A stretch of DNA of 64,000 nt, from contig JAKMXF010000299.1 in the NCBI GenBank assembly GCA_024704765.1, positions 434,001 to 498,000 of the forward strand, given 5' to 3'. This document shows positions 22,501 to 64,000 of this stretch, piece by piece. Each line of letters opens with the position of its first letter. Positions within the stretch are counted from its first letter, which is position 1. The DNA comes from Oopsacas minuta (Eukaryota; Animalia; Porifera). Both the position numbers and the translations under genes were made by a program. The notes beneath the pieces were generated by a model. The model saw nothing but the letters and a program-made list of their open reading frames with translations. It made no database searches and was not told the DNA's origin.

Positions 22501-25030
22501 ATATTGCACTCCTTTTTGGTGATTACTCATATTTTCACACTTTCTATGTAAATACAAAGGAAGCTAGAGATTAGGTTTCAACATGTTATTAGGGGGTAAT
22601 TGGGTGCGTAGAGTCAGATTTTGAGAATTCCAGAGTCTGAAAGTTACAAATTAACAGATTTATCATATGATTAATCAATTTTCACACCTTTTTGTATATT
22701 CCTCAAAATCATGCTAAAGATTTCCTTTTAACTGCAAATCAGAGGTTATCGAGTTTGTAGATTCCAAATTTGACATTTTCAAATTTATATTTACATGATT
22801 TAACATATTTTAACATCTTTTTGTACATATTTCCAATTGATGTTAGAGATTCGTTTCTAAAGTTAGACAGGGTAATTGCAGGATAATTATTTAGAATTTT
22901 ATCAATAGGATTGGGGATAGAACATGAAGTTCAGTAGGGGACGAGAATATTGAATGTCCTCCAATAGCCCAAAATCATTCGTGGTCCAGTGCATCGTGGC
23001 ATCTACAAGGTGGGGTCAGGGGGGCATCCCCCCTGAAAAGAACAAAAATACTAACATGGCCATGATACATACAATTTACATATAATACAGTGTTTATCTT
23101 GTAATTTATTTGGTTAGATAGATCCATTGAAAACATCAGAATCTCTTGTGCAAGAAAACTTAAGTATTCTCCTTCATCATATCCGCTTATTATGGGATAA
23201 GATCCAGACTTCTGTTAAACTGATACCGAAGTTAGTTTCATCATAATTTCTATATGAGTAAATGTAATGTCAACCGATATTTGGCTCAATTATTATGTTA
23301 TTAATGTGTTTTTCAGGATCTTGAGATATATATTCTATATGGTCAGATGTCAGGTATCTGAGAAATGGCCTGAAGACAAACTAGTGGGTCATAGGATTGT
23401 CAGGTTAGATAGATTCATATAATCATTGTCTTGGCCTGGTTTATATATGTAGATTGTTCTATCCTTAATTTTGTTGTATCAACCAATATTTTTTCGTGTA
23501 AGTTTCCGTTTTGATATTTGCCAAACATATCTTAACAAATATTTGAATTTTATTTATTCTTTTCCTGTTTAGCTGTTTCTTGTTTTTGAGATTTATCTGT
23601 CCTGCTATCACGAATCCTAAACTATATTCTATTGTAGAAGGTAAATTTCTTTAATTTCTAACTCTAATTCTATGAGCGCAGATCAAAACGTCTACAAACC
23701 GACCAATTATTGCTATGCGATTCCTCAAAGGTTTTTTATCGAATTTCTGAGAGAATTAGTGTTATTGTTGTATTTGTGCATTTACTACATTATTGGGATA
23801 CTTCTTTGGAATTTTGTTGGCATTAGTGTCTATCTTGGCTCGGACTGTTGTTCGGACTTCTTGACCACCCCGTGGTTTTTGGCACGTGAATTTTAATGGG
23901 TTATTGGCGATACTGTAATGACTATTATCGAATTAGTATTTTTGAGGAATTGCATTTTTGTCTAAGAATTTCATCTGTGCCATTTGTTAACGTTTCAGTA
24001 TGTAAACGTTTTAACCGTAATCAATTCTATTACTCTACATATTTATATCAGATTTAATGTACGTATATCTAATTTTGTAGATCTTCCAGTAGACTCTTAC
24101 CGCTCTCTTACATTAGTAGCTAAAACTTTACAAAATCTTGCAAACTTTGCTATTTCACCAAAGGTATATTACTTCGTACCGTATTTCCCTGAATAAGTGT
24201 CGAAAGCAAGAAAATGTCTCCAAGAATTATCACCATGACCCTCTAGAAGAATTTGTGTGAAATTTCCGCCTCATTTGGTTATGCAACAAATTAGAGTAAT
24301 TTGTTTCCCAAAATCATTTGTATTTTTTAAATTGTAAATAATTTCTACGAAAAGAATAACCCCCTGTGACTTATTCAGGAAATACAGAGAGTATATTTTT
24401 ATTCAATATATTTGCATGGAAATTTTTATTCTTGCATATTATTTGTAGGAACAGTATATGCGGGTGTTCAAACATTTTCTTGAAGATAAACAGAAGGAAA
24501 TGAAAAATTTTTTAGATCTTATCTCTTCCGAGGTACATTCTTTCGTTGGAAATACAGTCTAACCTCCTTTAACGAGTGCCAGAGAGGCCGATGCTACCTC
24601 CTCTTCCCGTTTGTGGAGGTTGATTTGTATTGTACTAGGATTTTGCCCTGTAATTTTTCACTTCTCAAAAAATATTGAGTCTCTCTCTTTCTCTCTGGGT
24701 TTATAATATATACCTATATTATTTTCTTATTTGTAGGAAGCAGTGCCTTCCTATCCACCAATGGAGCTAGATTGTTCTAATGATCTAGCTGCACTACACC
24801 ATAAGATACAAGTAGTTAGAGACAAACTCATACCAGATGCAACACCTCAGGTTAGAATATATGTAATACTACAAAACAGAAGTATTTGCATATTTGTCTA
24901 AACTCAATCATTAAGTTTACTTATTTTATATTTTCTACATTATAAGGTTCTATCTCTTGTTAAAGCATCGGACAATATCTTTCTCAGAGAAGTCACACTT
25001 TGTAAAGGTGCTCATGTCACTCAATTATGA
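13538..25030 (+). CDS. RASA1: Ras GTPase-activating protein 1 (SH2-SH3-SH2-PH-C2-RasGAP), 24 exons, ~868 aa
   Basis: Phase-consistent GT-AG exons: 13538-13542 (inferred), 13869-14154, 14210-14283, 14803-14920, 15522-15606, 15901-15967, 16030-16104, 16196-16271, 17736-17880, 18019-18104, 18221-18294, 18381-18468, 18678-18916, 19003-19088, 19351-19466, 19786-19996, 22087-22229, 23118-23230, 23317-23403, 23573-23640, 24081-24163, 24449-24532, 24737-24850, 24947-25030. Motifs: WFHGKLDR, YLVRQS, WFHENIDR, FLVR, arginine finger LFRNTTLAT, FLRFICPAI, AKTLQNLAN. Confidence 0.93.
15655..15782. mobile_element. hAT-type MITE in a RASA1 intron
   Basis: Imperfect TIR CAGGGGCGGATC / GGACCGCCACTG. 8-bp TSD GTTCATAC (15647-54) / GTTCATGC (15783-90), 7 of 8 identical. 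Confidence 0.75.
16419..17624 (-). mobile_element. Internally deleted, non-autonomous DNA transposon with transposase remnants (superfamily not assignable here)
   Basis: Long diverged TIRs starting CACTGG(A/G)CAACA, both ends flanked by TAA. The minus strand encodes the Cys-rich N-terminus MNTSRRQCTNHPDNFCYICG...GDQDKNWAPHICCTVC...PFAVPMIWREPK from 17173. A frameshift near 16905 continues NHTLDCYFC, then joins directly to the family C-terminus MESRYGGRFNPNMMGDYCWFLQRE...HF* (stop 16722-16720). The central region is missing. Confidence 0.85.
20425..21801 (+). CDS. MFS sugar-porter family transporter (SLC2/TRET1-like), intronless, ~458 aa, nested in RASA1 intron 19997-22086
   Basis: About 12 hydrophobic segments. 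Sugar-porter motifs LGRKKV, ARLVLG, PTSPHWL (PESPRWL-like), QILKEMSG, FSLGWGSI..IELFHPKHR. Likely start ATG 20425 (MTFNLKAE). Confidence 0.9.
   Translation: MTFNLKAEIYSFVTCLAGFLGIVSTGINSGMISPIIPELMKDELVTTELLPIFTGSYFVGTFIGHISTGCVVLLGRKKVLIISLSFIYYFVNYIFLFGLNSLSVIAARLVLGIHDSIVFDLFIVLTGEVVMDTRKSVYCTSMGISLRLSVLLAYLLGIWISYRYIVIVSMSCYTLCIILMVLQPTSPHWLIKKGHFEMANRVLFRIYQNQTVADEKFNEIYEQQCISGQTYQNIDNSNKLLEKFRSIFNWPVLKPILIISSLQILKEMSGHETIVSYCSLILSVNASVTNSTSILADKNVQALAYPSLLGLGSVLSLLIVSPKRLKAILIVTTVGQLIAHLSMTSYFVVTQYNLLNQTGIIMHYLFIWGELSIAMYGLFFSLGWGSIIYYLYIELFHPKHREFSTSICSLAMAVTSISSVTTNGYILEVFGGVVMFSSFSITCIVAVIFQIFLLPTLQ
22336..22490. repeat. Possible Helentron-associated (HINE/DINE-like) fragment
   Basis: T-rich start followed by GC-rich CGTCCGTACGTTCGTCCG (GTCC-like microsatellite) and an AAAATTGGTACACAT tract. 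A similar GTATGT...AAATTTGGCATG tract lies near 28000-28060. Assignment is by resemblance only. Confidence 0.3.
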
Positions 25031-48407: not shown

Positions 48408-51400
48408 TTAAACTGTATCATTCGATTTTACGATTATTCGTATTATCAGTGTATCATCTTTGAGGTATTGTACTTCTTCTGTTTCATGTAATAGCTCTTC
48501 ATGGGAAATAAACTGTGGACATCCGTGTCCTGTCTCGCCTCGTTCTTCCATTGGTCTCTGAAATGCTTTGTCTCCACTGTCTGAATTCTGCCAGTGATAG
48601 TGCTTGCCACCAGGGATGTAGTTTAGTAGAATGTATTTACGGCTTCCGGCAAATGGCCATGATAAATATGGATCATTTTTCCCTAAAAGGACAGTCATAA
48701 ATACGGGAAATTCCGATAATACAGAGAATTCAAATAAATGATATAAGTGAACCATGGATGTATTATACGTATATGTATCTGTATTTTTGGAAGATAATTG
48801 TATGATTGAATGAATATATGAAAGAATGAATACGAAAATTACCTTTTGGATGATCGCTAAATATATTATGTTTTATATCCATGGTTTTCAACTACAGTAT
48901 ACTCTGAGTAAAATAATATGCTTACCTCTCATCATAAACAGTCCCAGACCGATATGTGTATCCTCTCCAGGTCCGAATCCATTAAGAGCAACAGACACAC
49001 ATACTCTATATCCAGAAGGACTGGTGTAGAATGGATTTGAGTAGATAAACTGTTTCAATTTAAATTTCTCGCTAACACACTTAATAACCCACGTATAGTT
49101 ACCCCATACATTTAGCTCTTCGATTTGAGATACTCTCTTACTGTAATTACCGAGAAAAGTTTTCAAACGTTTGTTTTCTTCGTTAGCTTTCTGTAATTCT
49201 TCATGGAGATATTCTACTTCCTAGAAGGATACAATATAATATCATACACGTAGTTGTTCCATAACCAGTTGACATAAGTTATCTCGATTCTCTAATGCCA
49301 GTTTTCTCGACTATTCACTATCTAGAACAAAATTTCTTTCCCAGTCGAAAATAGTATTTGTCAAGTTTGAGAAATTATAATAGTAAATTTTTTTCAAAAA
49401 ATGAGATACATTAGAACTCGGATTAGTTCCCATTAATTATAATACAAATCCTACTTGGACAATACGTTGACTAGGATCGTACGTACTAAATTTGTTTCCC
49501 GAAGTAGCACGTCTTATCCGAGTTCTATGGTATACGTATATTGTTTGTATTTATAAAGCTAGCCTCCTGTTTGGTTTGATTCTTCTTATCCTTGGTGGTA
49601 GAAGAGTTGAACTTGTCTCCCTCTCCGGGGGAAATAGAGGAGGGGGTACCAACATTGTTTATAGTCAGTTTATCTTGTAGCTTCACTACCACATTACAAA
49701 TTTCTAAGAGTCTTTTCTCAAATCCTTCCAGCTTCCCATCTAGCTTTGTATCAAGCTCCATTAGGCTATCATTCATACTCTTGCTGGTGTCAAACAGTTT
49801 CTTCTTTATCCATTCTATTGCAACAGCTTGATCTGCTTGATTACGCTCACACTCTACTATCTTAGGTTCACAGTGCTTAACCACCTAACACAGAGAAAAG
49901 TATAAATACATTGTTATTGTAATAATGTAATTTAATTGATACATATATCAATAAAATTGACGGTAATATCCTAGGTTTGCAATAACATGTTATCTCTAAA
50001 CGAACATTCAAATACCTCAAACAGCTGATAACTAATCAAGTATATAGATATGCAACTTATACAAGGTAGAATAATATTCACAAATGGCACAAAGATCACG
50101 TAAGGTTATACCTGCAGAAATAGAACCACCAAGACAGCCTAACTATCGTAGAATGAGTAAACCGGTTGTCACTATGGGGCCGATAGGGAAATCACAAGGA
50201 TATGTTGATGGAGCACGGGGTGTAGCATACCGCGAGGATACTCGCGAAATATATGTGATTGATGAAGAAAATTCGCGAATACAGATTTTTCTAAATGACG
50301 GTCAGTTCGTCCACGATTTTGGAGAAGACGAATTGGATATGCCTTCTAACATACTCCTACATGACGGACACTTGTTTATAACGGACTGGGGGTGGCCAGG
50401 AACATCTCTATTCAAATACGAAGCGAATACTGCCAAGTTAAAAAAGAAAGCGGGTAGAAATAATTTCGATCCCGAAAAGGGTTATAATTTGTTGAGACAG
50501 CCATGTGCCGGTCCAAACGGACACATTTACATACCGGACAATAACAACAACAGGATATGTGTATTTACAAAAGTCCTGGAACGAGTAAAGGTGATAAATT
50601 GCGAAGGAATGACTAGTCCAGTTGATATTAAGTTCGGGAAAGATCTTATGTATATATTAAGTAATACAGACAAATACTGCATACACATATGTACTTTATC
50701 AGGCGATAAGATAGAGTCTGTGATTACTAGAGGAGAGTTTAGAGCTAGAATGCAGGTACAATTCTCAAACTATTTCTTGAGAGATCCAGATAATAACTTC
50801 ATTATATCTGACTACAATGATCATACTGTTAAGGTATTTAATGCTAGCGGTGAAAACCTGCTATATACGGTAGGAAAAGGAGAGCTCAAATATCCAATGG
50901 GTGTATTCTTAACAAGAGATGGCGAATTAATAGTAGCATCTGAAAATATGGGTTGTGGAGTACAGGTATTCTCATCGGATTAACTATTCGTTTCAATGTT
51001 TGTACGTATTTGATACTCAGTAATTCAATGTATGTAGAATAATTTTCTAATACAATTATTTATATAGAAATATTTTCACAAACATGTGACAGCAATTTAT
51101 TGTTAATGGAACTTGTATTAATGTTTACTTCCAATAGAGTTTGTGCAACAATGTGTCAGTAAATACCATAAATGTAGAATGGGTTAGTATGAGATATGAT
51201 TAATCACCAAATATGTGTGATAATTACTGTATGCACCTATGTGTGAAACTGTCAATTTTCATGTTTATCGTATATCCCTAAATTTCGGAAGTACGCACAT
51301 ACATCTCTACGGGAGATACACCATACAACCAACAGAATAATACTTATAAACTATTCTTACTACAAACTATATTTAACAATAACTAATATTCTACTCACCA

Positions 51401-53426
51401 AATCTAGATGTACGGGAACAGAGTTATCTATATGATCCTGTAGAGCCTCTCTGTAAGGTAGCTCTAAACATCCATGGTTAATATAGGGACATTGTTGTGT
51501 AGCCAGAGGACATACATTAGCTAAGTGATCAGCAACCTGACTACGTGGTAGAATATTCCTTCTGTCTCCGATCATACATCTGTTAGGACAGGGTATAGGG
51601 TATTCAGAACAGCCTGTAGAGGCGTGGTGTTCATTCAACAGTCTGCTCTCTATGTGCTGGGCACAGTACTCACAGACTACCTGTATGAAATCAAATGCTA
51701 TTACAGTAGAATCAGATAAGACGTACTACTACATCACAAAAATATGAAATCGGTTAACAATGTCTGCTATAAACATGGTGATTGATCTTACTGGAATAAT
51801 TCATACACCGAGACTAAATATAGCATACATGTTCATTACTACCAAAATCTACGAATACTTTTCGAGACAAACGAACATACAGACAAGAGGAATGTTCTGC
51901 CTTGAAGTATTGGAACAAGGGAGTGGAAGTTAGTGAAATAGAAGAGTTGACTAAAATGCAGAAAGTGCTCTCTTAATCATAATCAAAGTGAATAACAAGC
52001 GGAACAAACTATCCACTAGAATAAATTAAATTGAGAATTCAAATCAGATATTAGAAAGTGACTATGTTTCGTAATAGGAGACAATGCACGTAGCAATTGA
52101 TTTCTCACACAAATAGCTCAGATAGTCAATGGAACTATGAAATGATCCATAATCACGTGGACTCAGATTTTGGATTGATCATCAAATTGACGAATTTCCT
52201 AAACTGTATTAAATTGGATGGGAAAAGTTTGAGATATATATGGGTGACTGCGTTTTTAGGGCCTAGTCGTTCCAATTTTAGAAATATACAGAGTAAACTT
52301 ACATGAAACTGCGTATAACGACAAATTATTGAGTCTAAAAGTTTTAGTAATAACACCTTACTGCAATTTCTGTTATAAAATTGGTCTGAATTTCGAGGTT
52401 CCACCATATGTGTGTACCTGCGAAATTGGTCAATTAATTAGCTCAAATAAAAGATAATCAGATCAATCCAAAGTACTCTAAATACACTTTCTACAACGTT
52501 AGAAAACGAAACGTCAATATCATATCGCTAATTAAGAGTATTAAATTGATATATGAACTGACTAGTCTCTTGCCACATCTTTCCTTGAGGTGCCACTCAA
52601 TTTGTCCTCTCAGCTCATTCAATCCACATCCCACAGGACATGGGATACGTATCAATTCACATTCAGTTATATGTGTGCTCACCAGGTCTGCTAATGAGCC
52701 TATCCACGGACAGGACCTAGAGTGTAGGAGAGGACATGACACTTGTAATTTTGATACCTGATTTTGATGTCTAGTGTCAGGGAATTGACCGTCAGCTGGT
52801 AATCTAAAATAATGAATTCAATATATAATATTAATATGAAAGAGCTCAGCTCGGTTATCATAACTTCCATATAAGGAAATCATTGACATAAAACTTTCTA
52901 GATACTTATAATGTCGTAGCATATGAAAATGTTTCCAAAATTCTGACGTAAGTCGAATTAATCAAGTATTTTATGAATTTATAGGTATTACTTACCGTAC
53001 GCTGCATCCCTCTTTGGGACAATCAATCTTGATTTGTTCAATGGCTCCATGAGAGAAACCAGGATTACTCATCTTCTTTCTACGTCTATTAACCTTAGCA
53101 AATGCCTGCTCCATACAGCTCTTACAGCAGACAGCACCGCAGTGAATAGTCTGTACACTCTCCTTAGCTACTCCCTTACAAAGAGCACATATCATATCAT
53201 CTGATACAGGATCTCGCATGAGATCCAGTTTGTATCCTCCCCAATGTTGTGAATGAGGTGATCTAACGTATAGCATAGCGTCTAGCATATCCTCAGGTAG
53301 TGACCGACAAGGAGAGGTTGAAGTAGACCCAGAGATGTATCTCTGAGGAGATGTGGGTGCTGTTGGTGTGGGGGGAGATGTAGAAAGGGGGGATTGAGGG
53401 AAGTTCTCTTGTGTGGGAGATGCCAT
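48408..53426 (-). CDS. TRAF: TNF receptor-associated factor (RING - TRAF Zn fingers - coiled coil - MATH), 6 coding exons, ~621 aa
   Basis: Exons 53426-52996, 52803-52563, 51680-51399, 49884-49536, ~49213-48926 (acceptor ambiguous, 49220 alternative), 48682-48408. Motifs: CALC..CGAVCCKSC, FPDTRHQNQVSKLQVSCP, C-x-C-x-H-x-C fingers, MATH YSNPFYTSPSGYRVC...RGKNDPYLSWPF...GHGCPQFISHEEL...YLKDDTLII. Paralog number not assignable. Confidence 0.92.
50084..50983 (+). CDS. Stand-alone NHL-repeat beta-propeller protein, intronless, 299 aa, nested antisense in a TRAF intron
   Basis: Repeated NHL-like blades: RGVAY..EIYVIDEENSRIQIF; GHIYIPDNNNNRICVF; NFIISDYNDHTVKVF; PMGVFLTRDGELIVA. No RING, B-box or coiled coil. 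Confidence 0.9.
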   Translation: MAQRSRKVIPAEIEPPRQPNYRRMSKPVVTMGPIGKSQGYVDGARGVAYREDTREIYVIDEENSRIQIFLNDGQFVHDFGEDELDMPSNILLHDGHLFITDWGWPGTSLFKYEANTAKLKKKAGRNNFDPEKGYNLLRQPCAGPNGHIYIPDNNNNRICVFTKVLERVKVINCEGMTSPVDIKFGKDLMYILSNTDKYCIHICTLSGDKIESVITRGEFRARMQVQFSNYFLRDPDNNFIISDYNDHTVKVFNASGENLLYTVGKGELKYPMGVFLTRDGELIVASENMGCGVQVFSSD

Positions 53427-53777
53427 GTATTGTAACTTTTGTATTAGTATAATAACGCTAATATTAGTAAGCAAATAGTAAGTACAGTGATGCAGTTATT
53501 AATTGAGCGTGCAAAAGTGCAGCATTTGTTAGAAATGGGCAAAACGTAGGCTAAAAATTACTGATTCATTACGTAATCGGTCCAAATGGCCTGGTCCCGA
53601 AGTGACCCTTACCATCTTATTTCACATTCCTAAATATATTTAATAACTATCGCAAAATACATATACAAAGCACAATAGTCCAGCAACATTTATAACAATA
53701 CAGATATACTTACCATCTCCAGCTCTATACAAGTTACAGATATAGAGATGCAGGAAAATTGAATGCTATTGCGGTTG

Positions 53778-56700
53778 CTATTTGCTTAAGTTCTCATTTG
53801 AAAGAGAGGATTGGTCAATGAGAGATAAATTGGCTATCGTTGTGGGCATATTACTTGGGATAGTACTTATTGATTCAGAGTGATTGTGGATTGAACTAGT
53901 GTCCATGTAAGTTAGGGTGTCTGTGTGTTGTGGGTCGAGAAGTAGTGGAGGCACTATCTAGTGAAAGCAGGGATGTATATGAAATTTGTGCTGGAAATGT
54001 ATGCTTGTTGAAGCTCTCAACGGTTATATAAGGGTAACTGAGTATGTGGACTCAATTTCATAGCTTCAAGTTATATTATATGTAAATTTATTGTTGTTAT
54101 TATGAAAAATGTGAACAAATATTGAAATGTCTAAAATCTAGCAGAACCTTGGAAAAAGATCTCCAAGCAAGTGAAGTTTTACTGTACTAATGTAAACAAA
54201 TGAAAGATGCAAAATTTCTCAATAATACTTAAAATATTCCAAAATTTGCCAAATTTGGAGGAATTAAAATTTACATATAAATCTAAATTTAGAAAAACTT
54301 AGAAAATATTATTTGTGTGCAATTCTAGCTTATATATTGTTGATGATTTGTTTACTTTATGTCATGTAAATAATGAAAAAATGCTTACATTTACAAGCTA
54401 AATACAGGCTATATTCGTAAGTATAAAGGTGGAAGTATTAATTATTAGCTAATAATTATTTTGATGAATATTAATGATAAAATTGTGGTTTGATTCATTA
54501 CGCAAATGTAACCACCATTGAGGTATTCAGTCTTGAATAGTTTTACATAGAAAATAGCGATTCTCGTCAATTTAAACCGATAGTACACTAAATCACTTCT
54601 TTACAATATCTTTCCAATAAATACATATTTGATATGTAACAATTCGACGATAAAATATTTTAATAATTTCATGGAGTTCAACTTACCAATTCTGTTTCTT
54701 TTGGCTTGTCCACACGAGTAACTCGGAGCATTCCATGACCATTATGTCCTATTTTCTTTATAACTTCCATTCCGTCCTGTCTCACGAAGCAGCCCCCTCC
54801 CCCAGCACCCCTACCTCCTCCTCCTCCTGAGTAACCACCTCCCCCACCTCCCCCGAATGAGCCAATAGCTCCTCCTCCTCCAAATCCCCCGCACTCTCCT
54901 GACTCTCCTCCTAGAGACGATACAGGAACAAAGGAATGAATCAAATTCTCTGAATGAAACGTAACGCAAATCTATAGTATTAAATTAGCTTATTATTAAG
55001 ATTCCATCTAATAATTCATCAGAAATTGAAATACAAATTGGTTATGCAAATAAAATTCTATAATTCAGCATTTATATTTACCTTAGAATAAGCCCATCAT
55101 CTCAATAAGATCATATGCATAGGAAAAGCGTACGTTGATGTTTGTTTTATTGGAAAGTTCATATCAAGAGAGCTGCTGTAATTTGTATATAATACGTATA
55201 TGTAGCTTTGAATTGTACGAACTATGGATTCGAATTCGTAAATTAACTTTGCAAAAGTGATCGAGTCAGAATTCGAAAAGGACTGATATTTTAAAAACTA
55301 CTCACCTGATACAAATGAAAAACTTGTAGTAGCATTAGTATTGTAACCAGCTCCTCCATATCCAAATGAAGAATTCCTGAATATAGCATCTTTACCACAA
55401 CCACCAGCTGCTCCTCCCATAGCACATTCTTTACCAATACTACCTCCTCCTTCTTCCTATACAAAAGACACATAATTCATAATAATTCATAATAATATCA
55501 AGGTGAGTATTATAGCATTGCGTTGCTGTATTTACGGAAATTACCTCCAAGTTTCCAGGTTGTCCATCAGGATCATCCTCTTCATACCCTCTGGTACCTC
55601 CACCTCCACCAGCTATGATAAGAGGGTTCCTCCTTCCATTAATTGACACAAATGTTCCTCCAGCCCCTCCTGAACAACACCCTCTCTTCTGAGACATACC
55701 CCCGCATAAAATGTCCAAATAGTCATCTAAATACAAAAAGAATTTCAAACATTTTTAGAGAAATTAAGATATACGTAGTTTTACTCTACCTAGTCACTTC
55801 GTGTTTCTTCGTGTATACTGGCATGCATATTTTAAATAGTTATAGAAATATTTCCGTGCGTGAATACAAATCTTAAGAATAAGAAATGTCAGAACTACGG
55901 AACTTGTATCCACCAGGGAAAGGTGATAAATCTAAATAGATTTATACCAGCATAGGTGGCATGAATATACTTGAAAATAATGAAATTAGATTCTGTCATA
56001 CACACATCGTGCTAAGGGTATTTATAAATACCGGAAAATCCTCTCACTAGCAACTCGAGGAGTCCCTCAAGATAACATGAGTCAATCTATGTGTGGCACG
56101 AAATGCTATCAAAATTTGAGTTATTTAAAACGACTATTCGCATACGAGAATGAGTTCATTCCCTGGACTGATAATGATTGGATATGTATGCGAGATATAT
56201 CATATTCATTTGTGAATTTGCTACCTGATATCTGATACAAATATATACACAGCAATGAACACCTGTTCATTAACTAATTCGAGAAAAACGCTTCTCCCAC
56301 TGACATTATCACTTAGAAATAGACCACCCAACAACCACAGGGTGCTCAAGAAGTCCGGATATCAGTCGCAGCAAAGACAAATACTAATTCGAGGCAAAAT
56401 TCTTCCAAACTATCGTAATCGTGAATATAAAAGTACTTAGACAACAGTGAACGCCATATCATGAACTAATTGGATAAAATAATTCTCCCACTGCATAATA
56501 TAGCTTCAAAATAGATTGCTTCACATTCTTACATGCGAATAGTAATTTTTAAATATGCAAATTTTCGATGTCAGATAGTAAAGTGGCAGATACTATATAT
56601 ATATCAGTTATGGCACCAAAACAATATTTAATCTTAATTAATATTTGTATTTTTTGCATATTATTTTAGTATCCACAATCCTCAAGATAAATTTTTCCGG

Positions 56701-59700
56701 AACAAGGCAAATTTGCTTTCATAGAATAAATGAGAATAAAACGGAAATGAGTCGTTAATATTTGTTGTTATAAAAAGTCAAAACGTTAGTATTTTGCAAA
56801 TAACAATTCAATCTTAACTACATATAACGATATAACGATATAACGATATAACGATATAACGGTTCTTCAATTAGTGGATATAATCACTATAAAGTGAAAG
56901 CTATTGTTCATTATAACTATAGCTACTTAATAATCTATTCGGAATAACCAACAGCTGGTAATGCATTTGATAACTATTATATCGTCAAATGTATAATGAC
57001 ATAAAAAATTGGATAATGATTAATTAACTCACTCGCATTGAGAAGGAATGTAGCACATAATACAGCACCAGCTCCACCTAGTCTCATTTCTCCATCATCA
57101 GCTTTTGCCCCGAAACTCTCAAACCGATAATATCCTGAGTTAGGTATAACTGATTCCACGATCTCACCGCAATATGTAAACTCAAATGGGAAGTTAGAAT
57201 ATGTTGCAGAGAATGTATGCGACCACATTCCCCAGCCTGCAGCATTTTGAGAGCGAATCCTGAACCTTAATGTATATTCGCATAAAACAATATCATACGC
57301 ATTTATATAATAAAATCATAAGGATCTCGCGCGTGATAATACCCTATGAGATCATATGCTGACCATAACACGATTGCGCGACCATTCAATTACCCAACAT
57401 TAATTGCAGATTTAATGTTACTTAATAGTACTCTATTCTATGGGATTACACTACGATTCTAATTTAATGAAATTACGTAATAGTTTTATAAAGAACATGA
57501 AAGGAAACATAGCATGAGAATACATGTTATTTCGTAGTCACATGCTTGAGTTCACTAATTTAATTGTTACAAGACAATTGAGCGAAATAATGTAGAACTC
57601 GGGTAAGGCATACTTCTTTCAAACCATATCATAATTTCCCTTCATTTATGTAGTGCAATTCTTAGTATCATAAGTCGTACACTTGGATACTATGTACCAA
57701 CTTTTGTTTCCTGAAGGGATACATCTTATCCGAGTTCAACTATAGTACACATCCGTATCCATTTAAATGGCCGTATGAGATGGCCGGTTGGTTAGGCTGC
57801 AACTTGCAACAGTGAGTATGGAGAAAACTGAACCAATATTTCTGGGGTTTGCATAGAGTCTGAAGGTGAGTGATATCACCTACTTTCTCTTGATCCATAT
57901 TAGGATTCAGTGATTTATATTTTAGATACAAAATACTAAGAATCTTTTTAGTGTTAGAAAGTGAATTCATAACAATCTATCGCAATAATTTTATTACGCG
58001 TATCTTGAATCGTTTTTATCCAAATCACTATTACCATCACTTTATGTATTATCTGTTTTAGTGGTGAATTTAAGGCAAACACTTAAAGTGATTTCATCAT
58101 AGAATTATCAGAGCAGACTTTTTTTCACAGAATAGCAAATTACTGGTTTCACGTGTCATGGACAGATTGACGAGTTTTTTGAAATAACAACGAGTAATGA
58201 GCGACTTCATGACACAAAATACAACATACTGACGTCATATGAAAAGTCTGTGAATAAAGCACCTATCCTTTATATATTACAAAACGTGGGACAAGTCTAA
58301 TTTACAGAGATGATGCGTTACCTAATGTTTATGATAACATTTTGTATTACATTGGAGTTTGTTGTATATCAGCAAACTTTGGTTTTTGTTCTCAAACAGT
58401 TATTTATATGTAAAGTCACAAAGAGGTGCCAACCTTATTAGTACAAAATCTACACTTGGGACCTATGGGAAATTATCTCCATAGAAATCTCGGTTTAGTT
58501 CATCAACAAGGAAGGTGAATAATCAAGTAGTTGTGAGTTTGTATTCGAGGTAATATATAAATCAGAAATCGATTTGAATATAAAAGATAATCATATCCTA
58601 CCTGTAAGTACATCCAGGAGCTAATCCTATAATCCTAACACTAACTAGAGAACCATCATAGAACGTAACTTGACCATCTTCCTCCTTCAAGCAATGTTTC
58701 TCTTCCATTACAAGTTCTCTCTCTATTTCGTACTGTAGTACTTTCATGTCAGGAGGGTCCCATTGAATGTACAATGAACCTACAATGCATTATAACAAAT
58801 ATGAATACTTATAATAAGGGATTCCATAATCTAATCAGGATACTACAATACAATAATATGGATTTTCAGAAAGATGTCTGTTTGTGATAATAATATATAC
58901 TACATTGTAATTCTTATCAACATGTTTATTTTCAAATATATTCACGATATATAACTCAATCTACAATCATCACTATAAACTCAGGTTACATTGAAAAAGA
59001 ATTTTGTGCTTAAGTATATCAGTGTAGGATTGTACGTGTATCAGTTTGTTTGTATCGAATTGTATAAAAATGGTCATGAGAGACACTAACCATGATTATT
59101 AAAATACCATTAAGAAATGTCCAGGCGACGATGTGTACGATTACAGTTTGTATAAGTAAGACTAATCACCTTTAATATGCACAGCCTCGATATTTTTTGG
59201 TATAGGTCCTCCCCCTACTACACCAAAGTTCTCCACCAGCTGAATAAATGTAGTATCTAGATACACAGGAAGACCCGTGTTAGCTAGAGGCTTATGTAAA
59301 CCTTTATCTTCATCTCGTAGCGTCTCATCCAGCTTGTTAATCACTGAGTCACTGTTACGTAAGAACTCACTAGTGTCTTTCTGTAGGAGGACATTCGCAA
59401 AATCGATACACCTGTAAAAGCACAAATAATATCAATGGCTTAGGGATCATTTGAGTAGAATATTCCAAAAACAATTCGTGTAATCACATATTTAAACAAT
59501 TATAACATAACTAAAGATTATGCTTCCAAACAGTAAATATAACTTTACTAGTTTCCTAACTCACTTAGATATCCTGGTAGCAGCAACAGCAAGATGTTCC
59601 TGTTGATACTGTAGTCTAGCTGTTCTATTCTTCTCCTCTGTCTCTACCATACTGAGGAGAGCTGCTTGTCTCTTCTGTAACGCAGCCTCAAGAGCTCTAC

Positions 59701-61049
59701 ACTCTATACGAATACAGTCCATAGCTCTGTCTGCTGAAGGTCTTAGATCAGTTAGAATGCATTTTACCTGATACAACATAAGAATAATTAATTTGACATT
59801 CCAGGGAACGGTTGAGCCAATTGGGGTCATCCATTCTAATGGAGTTATACATCACTAATGATCTGAAAATTGTTTAAATGTGGACCCAAACCGTTTAAGT
59901 ATTTCATCGGGTCATATCAAAGTAATTATTGAGCTTCGAAGTAAAGGGAGTTAAAATTATATTTAATTTATGATTTTAAAGTTATATCAAATTCGATTGA
60001 TTGTATGTAATTACACTCACCTGCTCCATAGCACCCCTAATGGTGAATTGATATGCTTGTAGATGTCTCAGCTGTGATCTGAGTCTGTCTTTGTGAGAAG
60101 AAACTGCTTCCGGAATAGCTACAACATCTGACTCAGATATTCCAGATTCTTGTTTACAGATTACACATTTCAGAGATTTCTCAGACACACAATAGAATTC
60201 TAGTGGGTTGTTATGAGCAGCACATACTGGTCTAGCTTCATATTCTGTAGTAACACCGAGTGGTGTAGGATTGTGGAGCTCTGTAATACAAAGTAATAAT
60301 AAATTGAAATTGTATGTTGAAAGTATTGTTCAGTGTACAGTTGAAATAGGGTTTTTTTGTTCATTTGATTACACTGCCAAAGCAAAGGCTGTATATATTA
60401 GCTATAAATGTACCATTCAATTACTTTTGAAAGAACACTAAAATATGGGACAAATGAGTGGAACTAACTATAAATTGTCTACATCCTCAGAGAAACAAAA
60501 AAGTAAATAAGACAAAAATTCCGAATAAACAATTTATACAAAGATTTCAGGACAAATAACCAGATGACAAATAACGATATCTACTGTATGTGTAATAATT
60601 ATCTACATATAGAAAAAACACTCACTTGCGATTGGAGAAGGTCTATCATGCTCCACATTAGAACATCTCAAACAAAGTCTAAATCCATCAGGACCACAAT
60701 GTTCACAGTAAACTTGTGCTTCAGCCATTCTACAAGCCTCACAAAGAGGTACACGAGGTTTAGGTGTATAGTTATCCTGTTTCTCCAGTATTTCAAGAAT
60801 AGCATAGTTTATACGTAGTGATTGAGTACCAAATTCTACCTGTGTTTTTCTCATGCAAGCAGGACACTGTATATTTCCTATCTGTGATACTTCACCCATA
60901 CAGCGTGTACAAAATGTATGTCCACAGTCCAATATCCGAGGTTGTAGATCTCCTTCTACTTGATAAGGTTGATGACATACTCCGCATTCAAATGCTTTGA
61001 AACGTTTTGCGAAATTCACTGCATTTCCAACAGAATTGAATTCTGCCAT
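53778..61049 (-). CDS. TRIM-type E3 ligase: RING - B-box1 - B-box2 - coiled coil - FN3 - ALK/LTK-type glycine-rich domain, 10 exons, ~758 aa
   Basis: Phase-consistent exons 61049-60626 (alternative ATG 61070), 60280-60021, 59767-59565, 59411-59170, 58779-58602, 57265-57033, 55726-55545, 55456-55306, 54910-54687, 53957-53778. If exon 9 is not spliced, it stops at 54678. RING CGVC..CGHTFC..C..CPAC; B1 CEAC..CEHC..C..C..H; B2 CAAH..YC..C..C; FN3 WDPP..YEI..GLAPGCTYRFRIRSQNAAGWGMWS; then FTYCG..YYRFESFGA..NPLIIAGGGGG..GGFGGGG..GGGGGGYSGG..GHGMLRV. Confidence 0.88.
56133..56543. mobile_element. MITE (~410 bp) in TRIM intron 6
   Basis: 20-bp TIR ACTATTCGCATACGAGAATG / CATTCTTACATGCGAATAGT (17 of 20 matching). 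A second, inverted copy lies at 61145-61532. Confidence 0.8.
56823..56861. repeat. (TATAACGA)n microsatellite, ~5 copies
   Basis: Direct reading. Confidence 0.9.
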
Positions 61050-61144
61050 GATTGAGCTAAATAATTTCATATGTCGAGATATTAATACAATATATTTGAT
61101 GAGAAAATATATTTCTCCTACGAAAGGAAAAAGTATATTAAGGC

Positions 61145-61532
61145 CATGTATTTTGAAGCGATATTATATATTCGCAGTGGAAGAACGATTTTTATCGAAT
61201 TAGTTCATGATATGGCGTTCACTGTTGTATAAGTGCTTTTACATTCACGATTACGATAGTTGAGAAGGATTTTGCCTCGAATTAGTATTTACCTTTGCTG
61301 CGACTGATATCCGGACTTCTTGAGCACTCTGTGGTTGTTGGGTGGTCTATTCTAAGGGATAATGTCAGTGGGAGAAGCGTTTTTCTCGAATTAGTTAATG
61401 AACAGGTGTTCACTGCTGTACATGTGTGTATCAGATTTCAGGTAGCAAGTTCACAAATGAATTTATATATCTCGCATACATATCCAATCATTATCAGCCC
61501 AGCGAATGAACTCATTCTCTCATGCGAATAGT
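61145..61532. mobile_element. Truncated inverted copy of the 56133-56543 MITE, just upstream of the TRIM start codon
   Basis: Its reverse complement aligns by eye with 56133-56520 over ~390 bp at high identity. Only one TIR is visible (ending 61532). Confidence 0.8.
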
Positions 61533-62021: not shown

Positions 62022-64000
62022 TTAATTATAAAATACGTCAGGATACTGACTAGATAGTTTACGATAGAAACTACGTAGATTGTTAGCAGCTCGTGAGATT
62101 GGTGAATTTGGTTTATTGTAAGTTGCACAATTTGTGAAGATAAGCTCCATGTCTTGATCAAATTCATTAGCAGATCGGTAGATATTTTGTGATATTTTAT
62201 CGCCAATAGTTTGGAGACACATTGGATGTTTTATTATCTGCGAATAGTCCGGTACATACCGATCCGATACCGGTTCTAGGAAGGGATCAGCCAAACGATG
62301 ATTTTGTACTTTTTCCAAAATTTCTTCACAAAGAACCATGGTAGCTACAATTTCGATTTTCTGCTTTTTACTTCGAGTCTTTTTCAGAGCAGGTTCATTA
62401 CGTTTTCTCTTTCCCGTAATGACAGTTTTACTTTCCTTCTTATTTCTTAATTTTTGTTTCTCACTTGAATCAGAGCTGTTTGAAGTTTCAGACGAATCAC
62501 TGCTTTCATTTGAGCTTTCTTCCTCACTACTCTCTGTATCAGAAGCACTAACTTTCTCAGTGTAAGCCCCTCTTGCTTTACGGGACTTTGGACGTACAGG
62601 GGAAGTAGGCTGACAATCTGGACAGAACCAGTCGGTTTTTGGTATGAACTTAAGTGGGGGTGTTAAGCAAAATGTGTGGTAACCTCGATCACACTTGTCA
62701 CAAAGTAGGAGGCAGTTTTCATCTTTACCTCTACGACATATCTTACAGCGAGCATTCATAAGAGATTTATTCCAAGCAATGGAATATTCTAGAACAGAGA
62801 GATGTAGAGCTATCTGAGATAGACTCGTGCATTTTGAGAGAGAACATCTCCAAGCTTTAGCGCAGCTATATTGAACGTCAGCTGTTTGTTTCTTTTTCCC
62901 CTGTAAAGTTATATTCGAATTTCCAAGAGGTTGTTTGAGATATTTCGAATCAATACCTTCCTGTAGATTCAATAAACACTTTGACATTTCATAAACAACT
63001 CCATAAACAAGTTTATCACTCTCAACAGTAGGATTTAGCCTTACATAAGGAGTTACGCCAAATGTATCATCTGGTAGAAGTTCTCCTGTTTCAGGGAGCT
63101 TAACCGTAGACCCTATAGCTGTCTTGCTAGGAGAGGTCAAAGGACAACCTCCCTTCATAAAATCTTCTCTCCACCCAGTACGGTTTACCTCTGACAATGC
63201 ACCGAATCCACTGGTATATACCTTCTCTTCCAAATCGAGAATTTGTTCCCGTAGTGCTAACTCTAAGTATTCAGAAGCTTGCTCTGTGTTAGCTACTAAT
63301 CTTGCTACAGGATTATCATTCTTATTATCCATGTCGTCACTTGGTGACGTCACATTTTCTTGAGTAATTTTCTCAATTCTATCGAATATAGCTGCTCTAT
63401 ATTTGTCAATATTTGCCAGTAAATGAGCTTCACGGATACCCCTCCTACTCAGAGATTGGTAGAAAGATTCTATTTCAGGTATGGTAGCGTAGCTTGACCA
63501 TTTCTTGATTTCTCCTTGAATATTGAAAGAACTGTTAATTTCAGGTTTATCATATGTTTCATTTGGTGATTGATCATTTATGGAAATCGGTATATCAACC
63601 ATTTGTTGTTGTTGTGAAATCGTATCTTCCTGATATGATTCTTCAGGCATATACAGTGTAACAACTTCAATAGGTCTCTCAAGTATGTATGCCTCATGAC
63701 TTAAGTCTGGTGGTAGGTTACAAATAGGATTTCCTATGTCCATATTCAAACTAGTTTGGTTTTCAATTGACATTTCAGAAACTATCTGAGAGGATTGAAA
63801 AATTGGTTCAGGTTGTTCAGGTTGTTCTAGAATATTCGATTCTATATTCTTATAGTGTAGCATTAGTTCATTGACTTCATCGGGTAATGCTATATCTTTA
63901 CTGGTCATAGGTTCAACGAATATGCCAGGTAGACATTGAAATAGCCAGTAACGAGTATGAAACCTGTCTCTACCCAGTATAACAGCTCTGAGACTTGCAT
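62022..64000 (-). CDS. BAZ1A: BAZ1A/ACF1-like chromatin-remodelling subunit, 3' part (WHIM2/3 - PHD - bromodomain); 5' end outside the window
   Basis: The frame is open to the window edge: [20 protein letters not shown] (WHIM2/WSD), [12 protein letters not shown] (WHIM3), [52 protein letters not shown], bromodomain [24 protein letters not shown]. Confidence 0.9.

What the first reader, a model, noticed from the sequence alone, without database searches (positions are those of the whole stretch)
53778..61049. Novel-looking E3 architecture: TRIM (RING-B1-B2-CC-FN3) fused to an ALK/LTK-type glycine-rich domain
Exon 57265-57033 carries both the end of the FN3 (FRIRSQNAAGWGMWS) and the start of the next domain (FEFTYCG..YYRFESFGA), so the fusion is in one reading frame and not a gene-model artefact. 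The downstream motifs (GGAGGTFV, NPLIIAGGGGG, GGFGGGG, GGGGGGYSGG, final GHGMLRV) parallel the ALK/LTK ectodomain region built from a TNF-like sandwich and polyglycine-II helices, which binds ALKAL cytokines. Class I TRIMs (MID1/TRIM9/36) have FN3 followed by SPRY. Here a normally extracellular ligand-binding fold appears to be the substrate-recognition module of a cytosolic ligase, with no signal peptide or TM seen. It may be a new intracellular sensor/E3 family and may bear on the origin of the ALK/LTK ectodomain.
Basis: partly seen in the sequence, partly recalled or inferred. Interest (0 to 1): 0.85.

Follow-up and report, generated by a model that had tools for sequence, protein, structure and literature searches.

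The report
Sponge TRIM ligase with ALK-type glycine domain
This is a real, spliced sponge gene for a cytosolic RING (TRIM-type) ubiquitin ligase whose target-binding end is the glycine-rich fold otherwise known from the outside of the ALK/LTK receptors; the same fold is also attached to two other kinds of ubiquitin-ligase scaffold in other eukaryotes.

Summary
A 10-exon minus-strand gene (61049 to 53778, 758 aa) encodes RING, two B-box-like zinc modules, a coiled coil, FN3 and a 238-aa glycine-rich domain (GRD, aa 457-694). All nine splice junctions appear in RNA-like contigs of one public run, including both sides of exon 57265-57033, which carries the FN3 end and the GRD start.

A profile of 31 homologous GRDs matches the window protein at E 6e-78. 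Its best solved-structure hits are LTK, ALK and nematode SCD-2. An AlphaFold model of a homolog's GRD aligns to human ALK GRD at Z 17 (191 residues, 2.9 A).

No signal peptide or membrane segment is present. Full-length relatives exist in glass sponges and demosponges, named "Midline-1-like", "TRIM23-like" or uncharacterized. Pfam scores for the GRD sit at or below threshold, so the architecture is largely hidden.

The nearest non-sponge GRDs sit in green-algal BTB-BACK proteins and in HECT proteins, and together they form one well-supported clade. The best reading is a cytosolic E3 ligase that uses the GRD as its recognition module; the target is unknown. I found no paper describing this. The link to the origin of ALK is weak.

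The parts
60626..61049 (-). Exon 1: start codon at 61049, C3HC4 RING (aa 21-65) and a B-box1-like zinc module (aa about 102-135).
   Evidence: Pfam zf-RING_5 scores 35.7 bits against a cutoff of 27.9. ANCHR-like B-box scores 14.8 bits, below threshold. The donor at 60626 is joined to 60280 in X4. An in-frame ATG also lies at 61070, and an upstream exon is not excluded.
60021..60280 (-). Exon 2: B-box2 and the start of the coiled coil.
   Evidence: Pfam zf-B_box scores 24.6 bits against a cutoff of 24.1. X4 shows the joints 60626/60280 and 60021/59767.
59565..59767 (-). Exon 3: coiled coil.
   Evidence: Pfam TRIM_CC scores 21.4 bits on this exon alone, below the cutoff of 30. The matching region of the closest full-length homolog is a 109-residue helix in its AlphaFold model. 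The joint is seen in X4.
59170..59411 (-). Exon 4: end of the coiled coil and a helical linker to the FN3. This is where a COS box would sit; that was not tested.
   Evidence: No Pfam hit. The homolog model has helices at 310-329 and 350-358 here. X4 shows the joints 59565/59411 and 59170/58779.
58602..58779 (-). Exon 5: most of the fibronectin type III domain.
   Evidence: Pfam fn3 scores 17.1 bits on this fragment. Homologs score 27-43 bits. X4 shows the joint 58602/57265.
57033..57265 (-). Exon 6: last FN3 strand plus the first 57 residues of the glycine-rich domain. This is the exon that bridges the two domains.
   Evidence: It encodes aa 436-513, and the GRD profile match begins at aa 457. 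X4 joins it on both sides, 58602/57265 and 57033/55726. 88 library proteins match this exon, many across its full length.
55545..55726 (-). Exon 7: glycine-rich domain.
   Evidence: Pfam ALK_LTK_GRD scores 16.6 bits on this exon alone. It lies inside the A1 profile match. The junction to exon 8 is supported by X4 loose ends at 55544 and 55458.
55306..55456 (-). Exon 8: glycine-rich domain.
   Evidence: It lies inside the A1 profile match. X4 shows the joint 55306/54910.
54687..54910 (-). Exon 9: the main polyglycine block and the closing beta strands of the glycine-rich domain, which ends at aa 694.
   Evidence: A1 profile match. The donor is TTG|GTAAGT at 54687, and the X4 loose end there matches the start of exon 10.
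53778..53957 (-). Exon 10: 59-aa Ser/Thr-rich tail and the stop codon (53780-53778).
   Evidence: The acceptor is cactag|ATAGTG. The X4 loose-end letters are the reverse complement of its first 14 bases. Longer sponge paralogs carry Ser/Pro/Gln-rich tails with a similar TIPE-like motif.

Best explanation
The gene encodes a cytosolic TRIM-type RING E3 ubiquitin ligase belonging to a sponge-specific multi-gene family. Where class I TRIMs carry a PRY/SPRY domain, this protein carries an ALK/LTK-type glycine-rich domain (GRD): a TNF-like beta sandwich interwoven with a polyglycine block.

The proposed mechanism follows other TRIMs. The coiled coil dimerises the protein. The RING recruits a ubiquitin-charged E2. 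The FN3-GRD end binds a still unknown partner, most likely a protein or peptide, and presents it for ubiquitination.

What is shown here: the spliced gene, its domain order, GRD homology and predicted fold, the absence of secretion or membrane signals, and the repeated pairing of this GRD clade with ligase scaffolds. What is inferred: ligase activity, dimerisation, and the GRD acting as the recognition module.
For: - All nine splice junctions are seen in RNA-like contigs.
- The RING and B-box2 score above the Pfam cutoffs.
- The closest full-length homolog folds as RING, two small zinc modules, a 109-residue helix, FN3 and GRD.
- The GRD profile A1 hits the window protein at E 5.7e-78.
- The top nine solved-structure hits of A1 are all LTK, ALK or SCD-2, with LTK at E 6e-5.
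- By Foldseek, all 21 hits with E <= 1e-3 are ALK/LTK/SCD-2 GRDs.
- VIA-align gives Z 17.0 to human ALK and 13.5 to SCD-2; the next unrelated fold is below Z 5.
- The highest 19-residue hydropathy is 1.31, and no N-terminal hydrophobic segment is present in the window protein or its homologs.
- No cysteine column is invariant across the 31 GRDs, which fits a reducing compartment.
- The same GRD clade follows BTB-BACK in green algae (Coccomyxa, Chlorokybus, Bryopsis) and sits N-terminal to a HECT domain in other eukaryotic proteins.
- These ligase-linked GRDs separate from 40 other GRDs with SH-aLRT 100.
Against: - No binding partner, ligase activity or localisation has been tested.
- The fold evidence comes from homologs (42-46% identical overall, 59% in the GRD), because the spliced window protein has no reference to hand to the structure tool.
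- Part of the polyglycine block is modelled at pLDDT below 50.
- Pfam PF12810 scores are only 17-26 bits against a cutoff of 24.5.
- Variable positions are not clearly concentrated on one surface of the GRD, so a diversified binding face is not demonstrated.
- RNA support comes from short contigs of a single sample, not from one full-length molecule.
Confidence: 0.65

Rival explanations
1. The GRD is not a substrate receptor. It is a rigid self-association or scaffolding module: the glycine lattice would drive higher-order assembly, or anchor the ligase to a cellular structure, much as the COS box and SPRY domain place MID1 on microtubules.
For: - The polyglycine block is almost invariant across paralogs and between sponges and algae, which suggests structural rather than ligand-driven constraint.
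- In ALK/LTK the GRD also makes receptor-receptor contacts (established knowledge of the 2021 structures listed).
- Variable positions are not focused on one face.
Against: - In BTB-BACK proteins, the position after BACK is normally the substrate-binding domain (Kelch, MATH). That is exactly where the algal GRDs sit.
- TRIMs already oligomerise through the coiled coil and B-boxes.
- The related folds in phage fibres and bacterial surface proteins sit in binding-type contexts.
Confidence: 0.17
2. The protein is an innate-immune sensor of the TRIM5/finTRIM type. Tandemly duplicated paralogs would use diversified GRD surfaces to recognise microbial or viral ligands.
For: - More than 100 distinct FN3-GRD proteins are in the databases.
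- Several pairs lie on the same contig, for example P0091/P0171, P0108/P0155 and P0163/P0169.
- At least four lie on one Dysidea avara chromosome.
- An earlier scan note reports a second copy in this genome.
- Related folds serve as receptor-binding tips of phage fibres.
Against: - No test for positive selection was run.
- Column entropy shows no hypervariable patch.
- High GRD conservation between sponges and green algae (about 48% identity) argues for a conserved cellular ligand.
- The window holds only one copy.
Confidence: 0.12
3. The fusion is a gene-model or assembly artefact: two neighbouring genes (TRIM-FN3 and a glycine-rich protein) are read as one, or the glycine-rich part is mere low-complexity sequence.
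For: The RNA evidence consists of short contigs from one sample, and no single molecule spans the whole gene.
Against: - The bridging exon is spliced on both sides at depths similar to every other junction, about 930-1340.
- Complete transcript ORFs with the same order exist in Vazella pourtalesii, and a 2669-nt Logan contig carries the same order.
- RefSeq models in Dysidea and Halichondria agree.
- The fold and profile matches exclude plain low complexity.
Confidence: 0.02

Closest known systems
Class I (C-I) TRIM ligases: MID1/MID2, TRIM9/67, TRIM36, TRIM46
   Same: Both have the order RING, B-box1, B-box2, coiled coil, helical linker, FN3, then a C-terminal recognition domain. RefSeq names one sponge member 'Midline-1-like'.
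   Different: The C-terminal PRY/SPRY is replaced by a GRD. The RING is nearest to TRIM23, TRIM32, TRIM2/3 and TRIM56 among solved chains, not to MID1. The COS box was not tested.
ALK/LTK ligand-binding glycine-rich domain (PF12810; PDB 7ls0, 7lrz, 7nx0, 7nx3, 7lir)
   Same: The predicted fold matches at Z 17.0 over 191 residues, 2.9 A and 33% identity.
   Different: There is no signal peptide, EGF-like module, membrane helix or kinase. No cysteines are conserved. The domain is about 240 residues against about 310 in ALK. The ligand is unknown, and ALKAL binding cannot be assumed.
BTB-BACK substrate adaptors of Cullin-3 ligases (Kelch-like/KLHL type)
   Same: Green-algal proteins place the same GRD clade directly after BTB-BACK, where KLHL proteins carry the substrate-binding Kelch propeller.
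   Different: The ligase scaffold and the organisms differ. They are relevant only as parallel evidence for how the GRD is used.
Phage receptor-binding fibre tips (cyanophage Pam3 fibre 7ypx; mycobacteriophage Bxb1 tail tip 9d93)
   Same: They are the next-best structural matches after ALK/SCD-2, at Z 8.6 and 8.1 over about 130 residues.
   Different: The match is much weaker, sequence identity is about 18-20%, and these are extracellular virion proteins.

Membership tests
TRIM / RBCC ubiquitin ligases | N-terminal C3HC4 RING finger | tested here: met
   Pfam zf-RING_5 scores 35.7 bits (cutoff 27.9), zf-RING_UBOX 32.2 and zf-C3HC4 28.3, all at aa 21-65. All eight zinc ligands are readable in the translation.
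TRIM / RBCC ubiquitin ligases | One or two B-box zinc fingers after the RING | tested here: met
   B-box2 scores 24.6 bits on PF00643 against a cutoff of 24.1, which is marginal. The B-box1-like module at aa about 102-135 reaches only 14.8 bits on ANCHR-like_BBOX, so B-box1 on its own is inconclusive.
TRIM / RBCC ubiquitin ligases | Long coiled coil following the B-boxes | tested here: met
   PF25600 TRIM_CC scores 21.4 bits on exon 3 alone and 26.3 bits in the Halichondria homolog, both below the cutoff of 30. The AlphaFold model of the closest full-length homolog has one 109-residue helix here. The window protein itself was not folded.
Class I TRIM (MID1/TRIM9 type) | FN3 domain after the coiled coil | tested here: met
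   Pfam fn3 scores 17.1 bits on the exon 5 fragment and 27-43 bits in homologs. Beta strands occupy 369-450 of the homolog model.
Class I TRIM (MID1/TRIM9 type) | COS box between coiled coil and FN3 | not tested
   I did not test this region against a COS-box profile. Two short helices after the coiled coil in the homolog model are compatible with a COS box but prove nothing.
Class I TRIM (MID1/TRIM9 type) | C-terminal PRY/SPRY domain | tested here: not met
   No SPRY hit was found in any exon or homolog. The C-terminal domain is a GRD instead.
ALK/LTK glycine-rich domain (Pfam PF12810) | Score at or above the Pfam gathering cutoff (24.5 bits) | tested here: inconclusive
   Only single exons of the window protein could be submitted; exon 7 alone scores 16.6 bits. 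Homologs score 17.2-26.2 bits over profile positions 6-235 of 243. P0094, P0097, P0019 and P0193 reach the cutoff.
ALK/LTK glycine-rich domain (Pfam PF12810) | Profile-level homology to solved ALK/LTK GRDs | tested here: met
   The top nine PDB hits of the A1 profile are LTK (E 6.1e-5), ALK (9e-4 to 1e-2) and SCD-2 (5.5e-3). The next hits are scFv linkers. The window protein matches A1 at E 5.7e-78.
ALK/LTK glycine-rich domain (Pfam PF12810) | Fold: TNF-like beta sandwich interwoven with a glycine-rich subdomain | tested here: met
   Tested on homolog P0027:174-418 (pLDDT 72.7, pTM 0.80). Foldseek gives E 5e-9 to 8e-6 for 21 ALK/LTK/SCD-2 chains and nothing else below 1e-2. VIA-align gives Z 17.0, 16.5, 16.2 and 13.5.
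ALK/LTK glycine-rich domain (Pfam PF12810) | Ordered polyglycine-II helix lattice | tested here: inconclusive
   Residues 148-198 of the model, the densest glycine runs, have pLDDT below 50.
ALK/LTK receptor tyrosine kinases | Signal peptide, EGF-like module, membrane helix and kinase domain around the GRD | tested here: not met
   There is no hydrophobic segment (maximum 19-residue hydropathy 1.31). No EGF or kinase Pfam hits were found. The GRD is followed only by a 64-aa tail.
ALK/LTK receptor tyrosine kinases | Binding of ALKAL/Augmentor cytokines | not testable with these tools
   This needs binding assays or complex modelling with candidate ligands.

The most novel reading that the evidence does not exclude
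The ALK/LTK-type glycine-rich fold has an unrecognised intracellular life. One distinct, conserved GRD clade would serve as a recognition module plugged into three unrelated ubiquitin-ligase scaffolds: TRIM RING ligases in sponges, Cullin-3 BTB-BACK adaptors in green algae, and HECT ligases in other eukaryotes. That would imply a conserved cytosolic ligand or degron class for this fold.
Probability: 0.45. Interest if true: 0.78.

Novelty: new variant of a known kind. Interest (0 to 1): 0.6.

Why it matters
TRIM ligases are classified by their C-terminal recognition domain, and a GRD would add a class not listed in the broad TRIM survey I could read (PMC3503706).

In animals the GRD has been treated as the hallmark ligand-binding region of the ALK/LTK ectodomain. 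Finding it in predicted cytosolic proteins, three times on ligase scaffolds, suggests a general binding function that could be tested directly with pull-downs and ubiquitination assays.

It also exposes a blind spot in annotation. Pfam scores for this clade hover at the cutoff, so architecture databases mostly miss it. A clade-specific profile would map it properly.

Tried and rejected
- **Gene model:** My first exon 2 acceptor (60244) and my first stop (54678) were both replaced by what the RNA-like contigs show.
- **ESM Atlas feature search with exon 6:** it gave no usable hit.
- **Sequencing runs:** no run on record as RNA holds the locus. X4 behaves like RNA by its depth and joints, but its kind is unrecorded.
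- **Literature:** ten searches found nothing on a TRIM, BTB or HECT protein with an ALK-type GRD. The prefix 'alk' produced many false hits, and subscription papers, including the 2021 ALK structure papers, were not searchable.
- **Synteny with Oopsacas minuta:** none was seen. Intron-position comparison by tblastn was too blurred by short introns to use.
- **Test for a variable binding face:** entropy of non-glycine columns is 1.50 in the N-terminal sandwich part, 1.45 in the glycine part and 1.97 in the closing strands. This gives no clear patch.
- **Long tails of some paralogs:** these are Ser/Pro/Gln-rich with no Pfam family, so they are not a further domain.
- **A second copy in the window:** none found.
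- **Left out:** whole-protein Pfam scanning and folding of the window's own spliced protein, because a spliced sequence has no reference and long sequences may not be typed. Homologs and a local profile search stood in for these steps.
- **ALK/LTK in the tree:** true ALK/LTK sequences could not be added, because the solved-structure search returns no usable protein ids.
Full report
**Observation**

Splice-site enumeration gave one frame-consistent chain of GT..AG introns.

Three of the runs behave like genomic DNA. The fourth, X4, has strongly exon-biased depth and contigs that skip the introns. Its joints confirm these junctions: 60626/60280, 60021/59767, 59565/59411, 59170/58779, 58602/57265, 57033/55726 and 55306/54910. 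Loose ends at 55544/55458 and at 54687 carry the first letters of the next exon.

This corrected two of my choices. Exon 2 begins at 60280. The product is 758 aa; an unspliced message would end at 54678 and give 701 aa.

Exon 57265-57033 encodes aa 436-513. It therefore holds the last FN3 strand and the first 57 residues of the next domain, and it is spliced on both sides at depths like those of the other junctions. No single molecule spanning all exons was seen.

**Domains**

Scanning the exons one by one gave these results:
- The RING scores above cutoff at aa 21-65.
- B-box2 just reaches its cutoff.
- The B-box1-like module, the TRIM coiled coil and the FN3 score below threshold.
- Exon 7 gives a weak ALK_LTK_GRD hit of 16.6 bits.

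The spliced protein has no reference, so I worked through relatives. A HMMER search of 1.84 billion representatives with the bridging exon found 88 proteins, and many match the whole exon at 45-55% identity. One of them, P0024, comes from a 2669-nt transcript-like contig. It aligns with the window protein along its whole length and has RING and FN3 hits.

Relatives hit PF12810 over almost the full profile at 17-26 bits, around the cutoff of 24.5. I aligned 31 of their C-terminal domains as A1, which has 67% mean column identity. Against all solved chains, the A1 profile ranks LTK, ALK and nematode SCD-2 in the first nine places; LTK scores E 6e-5, and the alignment runs from the first strand to the last. 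The same profile hits the window protein at E 5.7e-78 over aa 457-694.

**Fold**

An AlphaFold model of the first A1 sequence reached pLDDT 72.7 and pTM 0.80, with part of the glycine block below 50.
- Foldseek finds only ALK/LTK/SCD-2 GRDs below E 1e-3: 21 chains, the best at 4.8e-9.
- An exhaustive VIA-align search gives Z 17.0 to human ALK (191 residues, 2.9 A, 33% identity) and 13.5 to SCD-2.
- Two phage fibre tips follow at about Z 8, and TNF-family folds at about Z 4.
- In the ESM Atlas the fold recurs in bacterial surface proteins and in cnidarian PAN/EGF proteins, many carrying PF12810.

A second model, of the closest full-length homolog, shows RING, two small zinc modules, a 109-residue helix, two short helices, FN3, GRD and a disordered tail.

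**Location in the cell**

The window protein and its full-length relatives have no N-terminal hydrophobic segment and no stretch that could span a membrane. No cysteine column is invariant among the 31 GRDs. RING, B-box and coiled-coil modules are cytosolic or nuclear by established knowledge. A cytosolic or nuclear location is therefore the reasonable inference.

**Who has it**

A word-indexed search with the GRD region returned 121 proteins. The named full-length ones are all from sponges:
- Vazella pourtalesii transcripts. The window protein is 45.6% identical to these over residues 4-701 of the 701-residue working model (exons 1-9), and 59% identical within the GRD.
- Oopsacas minuta KAI6653699.1.
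- Dysidea avara XP_065906780.1 ('Midline-1-like'), XP_065906781.1 ('TRIM23-like') and XP_065908500/1 ('uncharacterized').
- Halichondria panicea XP_064404140.1.

Many unnamed hits begin in the coiled coil. At one such locus the upstream ORF carries the B-boxes, so these are prokaryote-style gene calls on eukaryotic contigs, not shorter proteins. Several paralogs share contigs. Earlier notes of this scan call this genome a glass sponge and list a second TRIM-GRD gene elsewhere in it. I did not check those notes, but the closest homologs being hexactinellid fits them.

Some paralogs have long Ser/Pro/Gln-rich tails with no known family. The RING is nearest to TRIM23, TRIM32, TRIM2/3 and TRIM56 among solved chains, so the resemblance to class I TRIMs lies in domain order only.

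**The wider pattern**

The nearest GRDs outside sponges lie in other ligase scaffolds:
- After BTB-BACK in green algae: Coccomyxa XP_005643233.1 (GRD at 299-537, E 1e-53 to A1), Chlorokybus, Bryopsis and metagenomic relatives.
- N-terminal to a HECT domain (P0188). A 4105-aa relative has two GRDs.

In a quick maximum-likelihood tree of 85 GRDs, the 45 ligase-linked ones separate from 40 bacterial, cnidarian and brachiopod ones with SH-aLRT 100. The window's GRD groups with Vazella and Oopsacas at SH-aLRT 92.

Three caveats apply to the tree. It is unrooted. The 'other' set was chosen by shared words with my queries. True ALK/LTK sequences could not be included.

**Interpretation**

The best reading is a dimeric TRIM-type E3 ligase that uses the FN3-GRD end to bind its target. 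The strongest indirect support is positional. In BTB-BACK proteins the segment after BACK is the substrate receptor, and in TRIMs the C-terminal domain plays that role.

The rivals are these:
- A scaffolding or self-association role for the rigid glycine lattice.
- An immune-sensor version, driven by the size of the family.
- A gene-model artefact, which is now essentially excluded.

The idea that this gene illuminates the origin of the ALK/LTK ectodomain gains little. The fold is old and widespread, and the ligase-linked clade stands apart.

**Novelty**

The proteins are in public databases, but their GRD is mostly below Pfam's cutoff. The searchable literature, including a broad TRIM survey with no mention of glycine, does not describe the architecture. 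I class it as a new variant of a known kind: a TRIM ligase with a new C-terminal class.

Noticed in passing
window 56133-56494 and 61174-61532: A dispersed repeat of about 360 bp lies in intron 6 of the gene. An inverted copy (91.7% identical) lies 125 bp upstream of the start codon, and a short third match is at 23809-23882. The DNA runs show depth spikes over the intronic copy.
   Followed up: partly
window 57863-58060: X4 holds one low-depth contig (3.8) that skips 196 bases with GT..AG on the plus strand inside intron 5. This may be a rare antisense spliced transcript.
   Followed up: no
window 48411-53474 (minus) and 50084-50980 (plus): The next gene downstream looks TRAF-like: a cysteine-rich RING-like ORF at 52992-53474 (no Pfam hit) and a MATH domain at 48411-48755. 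An intronless 299-aa NHL-repeat ORF lies on the opposite strand between them, apparently nested.
   Followed up: partly
window 62025-63908 (minus): The upstream neighbour is a BAZ-like chromatin protein exon with WSD, PHD and bromodomain in a single 628-aa ORF.
   Followed up: partly
P0187, P0229, P0085, P0189, P0193, P0241, P0088, P0234 (proteins, not in the window): Green-algal and metagenomic BTB-BACK proteins end in a GRD of the same clade as the sponge TRIMs, about 48% identical to sponge GRDs.
   Followed up: partly
P0188, P0224 (proteins, not in the window): HECT-domain proteins from unidentified eukaryotes carry one or two GRDs of the same clade. P0224 is 4105 aa long and has two.
   Followed up: partly
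PDB 7ypx_A and 9d93_Qa versus model m40e7af0d8aaf: The cyanophage Pam3 fibre and the mycobacteriophage Bxb1 tail tip are the only non-ALK structures with Z above 8 to the GRD model. This hints that the fold is also a phage receptor-binding tip.
   Followed up: no
P0023, P0011, P0043, P0025, P0021, P0175, P0016, P0035, P0216 (tails after the GRD): Many sponge paralogs carry Ser/Pro/Gln-rich tails of 240-500 aa with a recurring TIPE-like motif. The window's 59-aa tail has STIPSN.
   Followed up: partly
L002 and L003 (ENA ERZ25072258 contigs): Two long contigs of one assembly carry the same FN3-GRD protein with the same neighbours. These may be allelic or duplicated haplotypes of an unidentified host, probably a sponge.
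   Followed up: no
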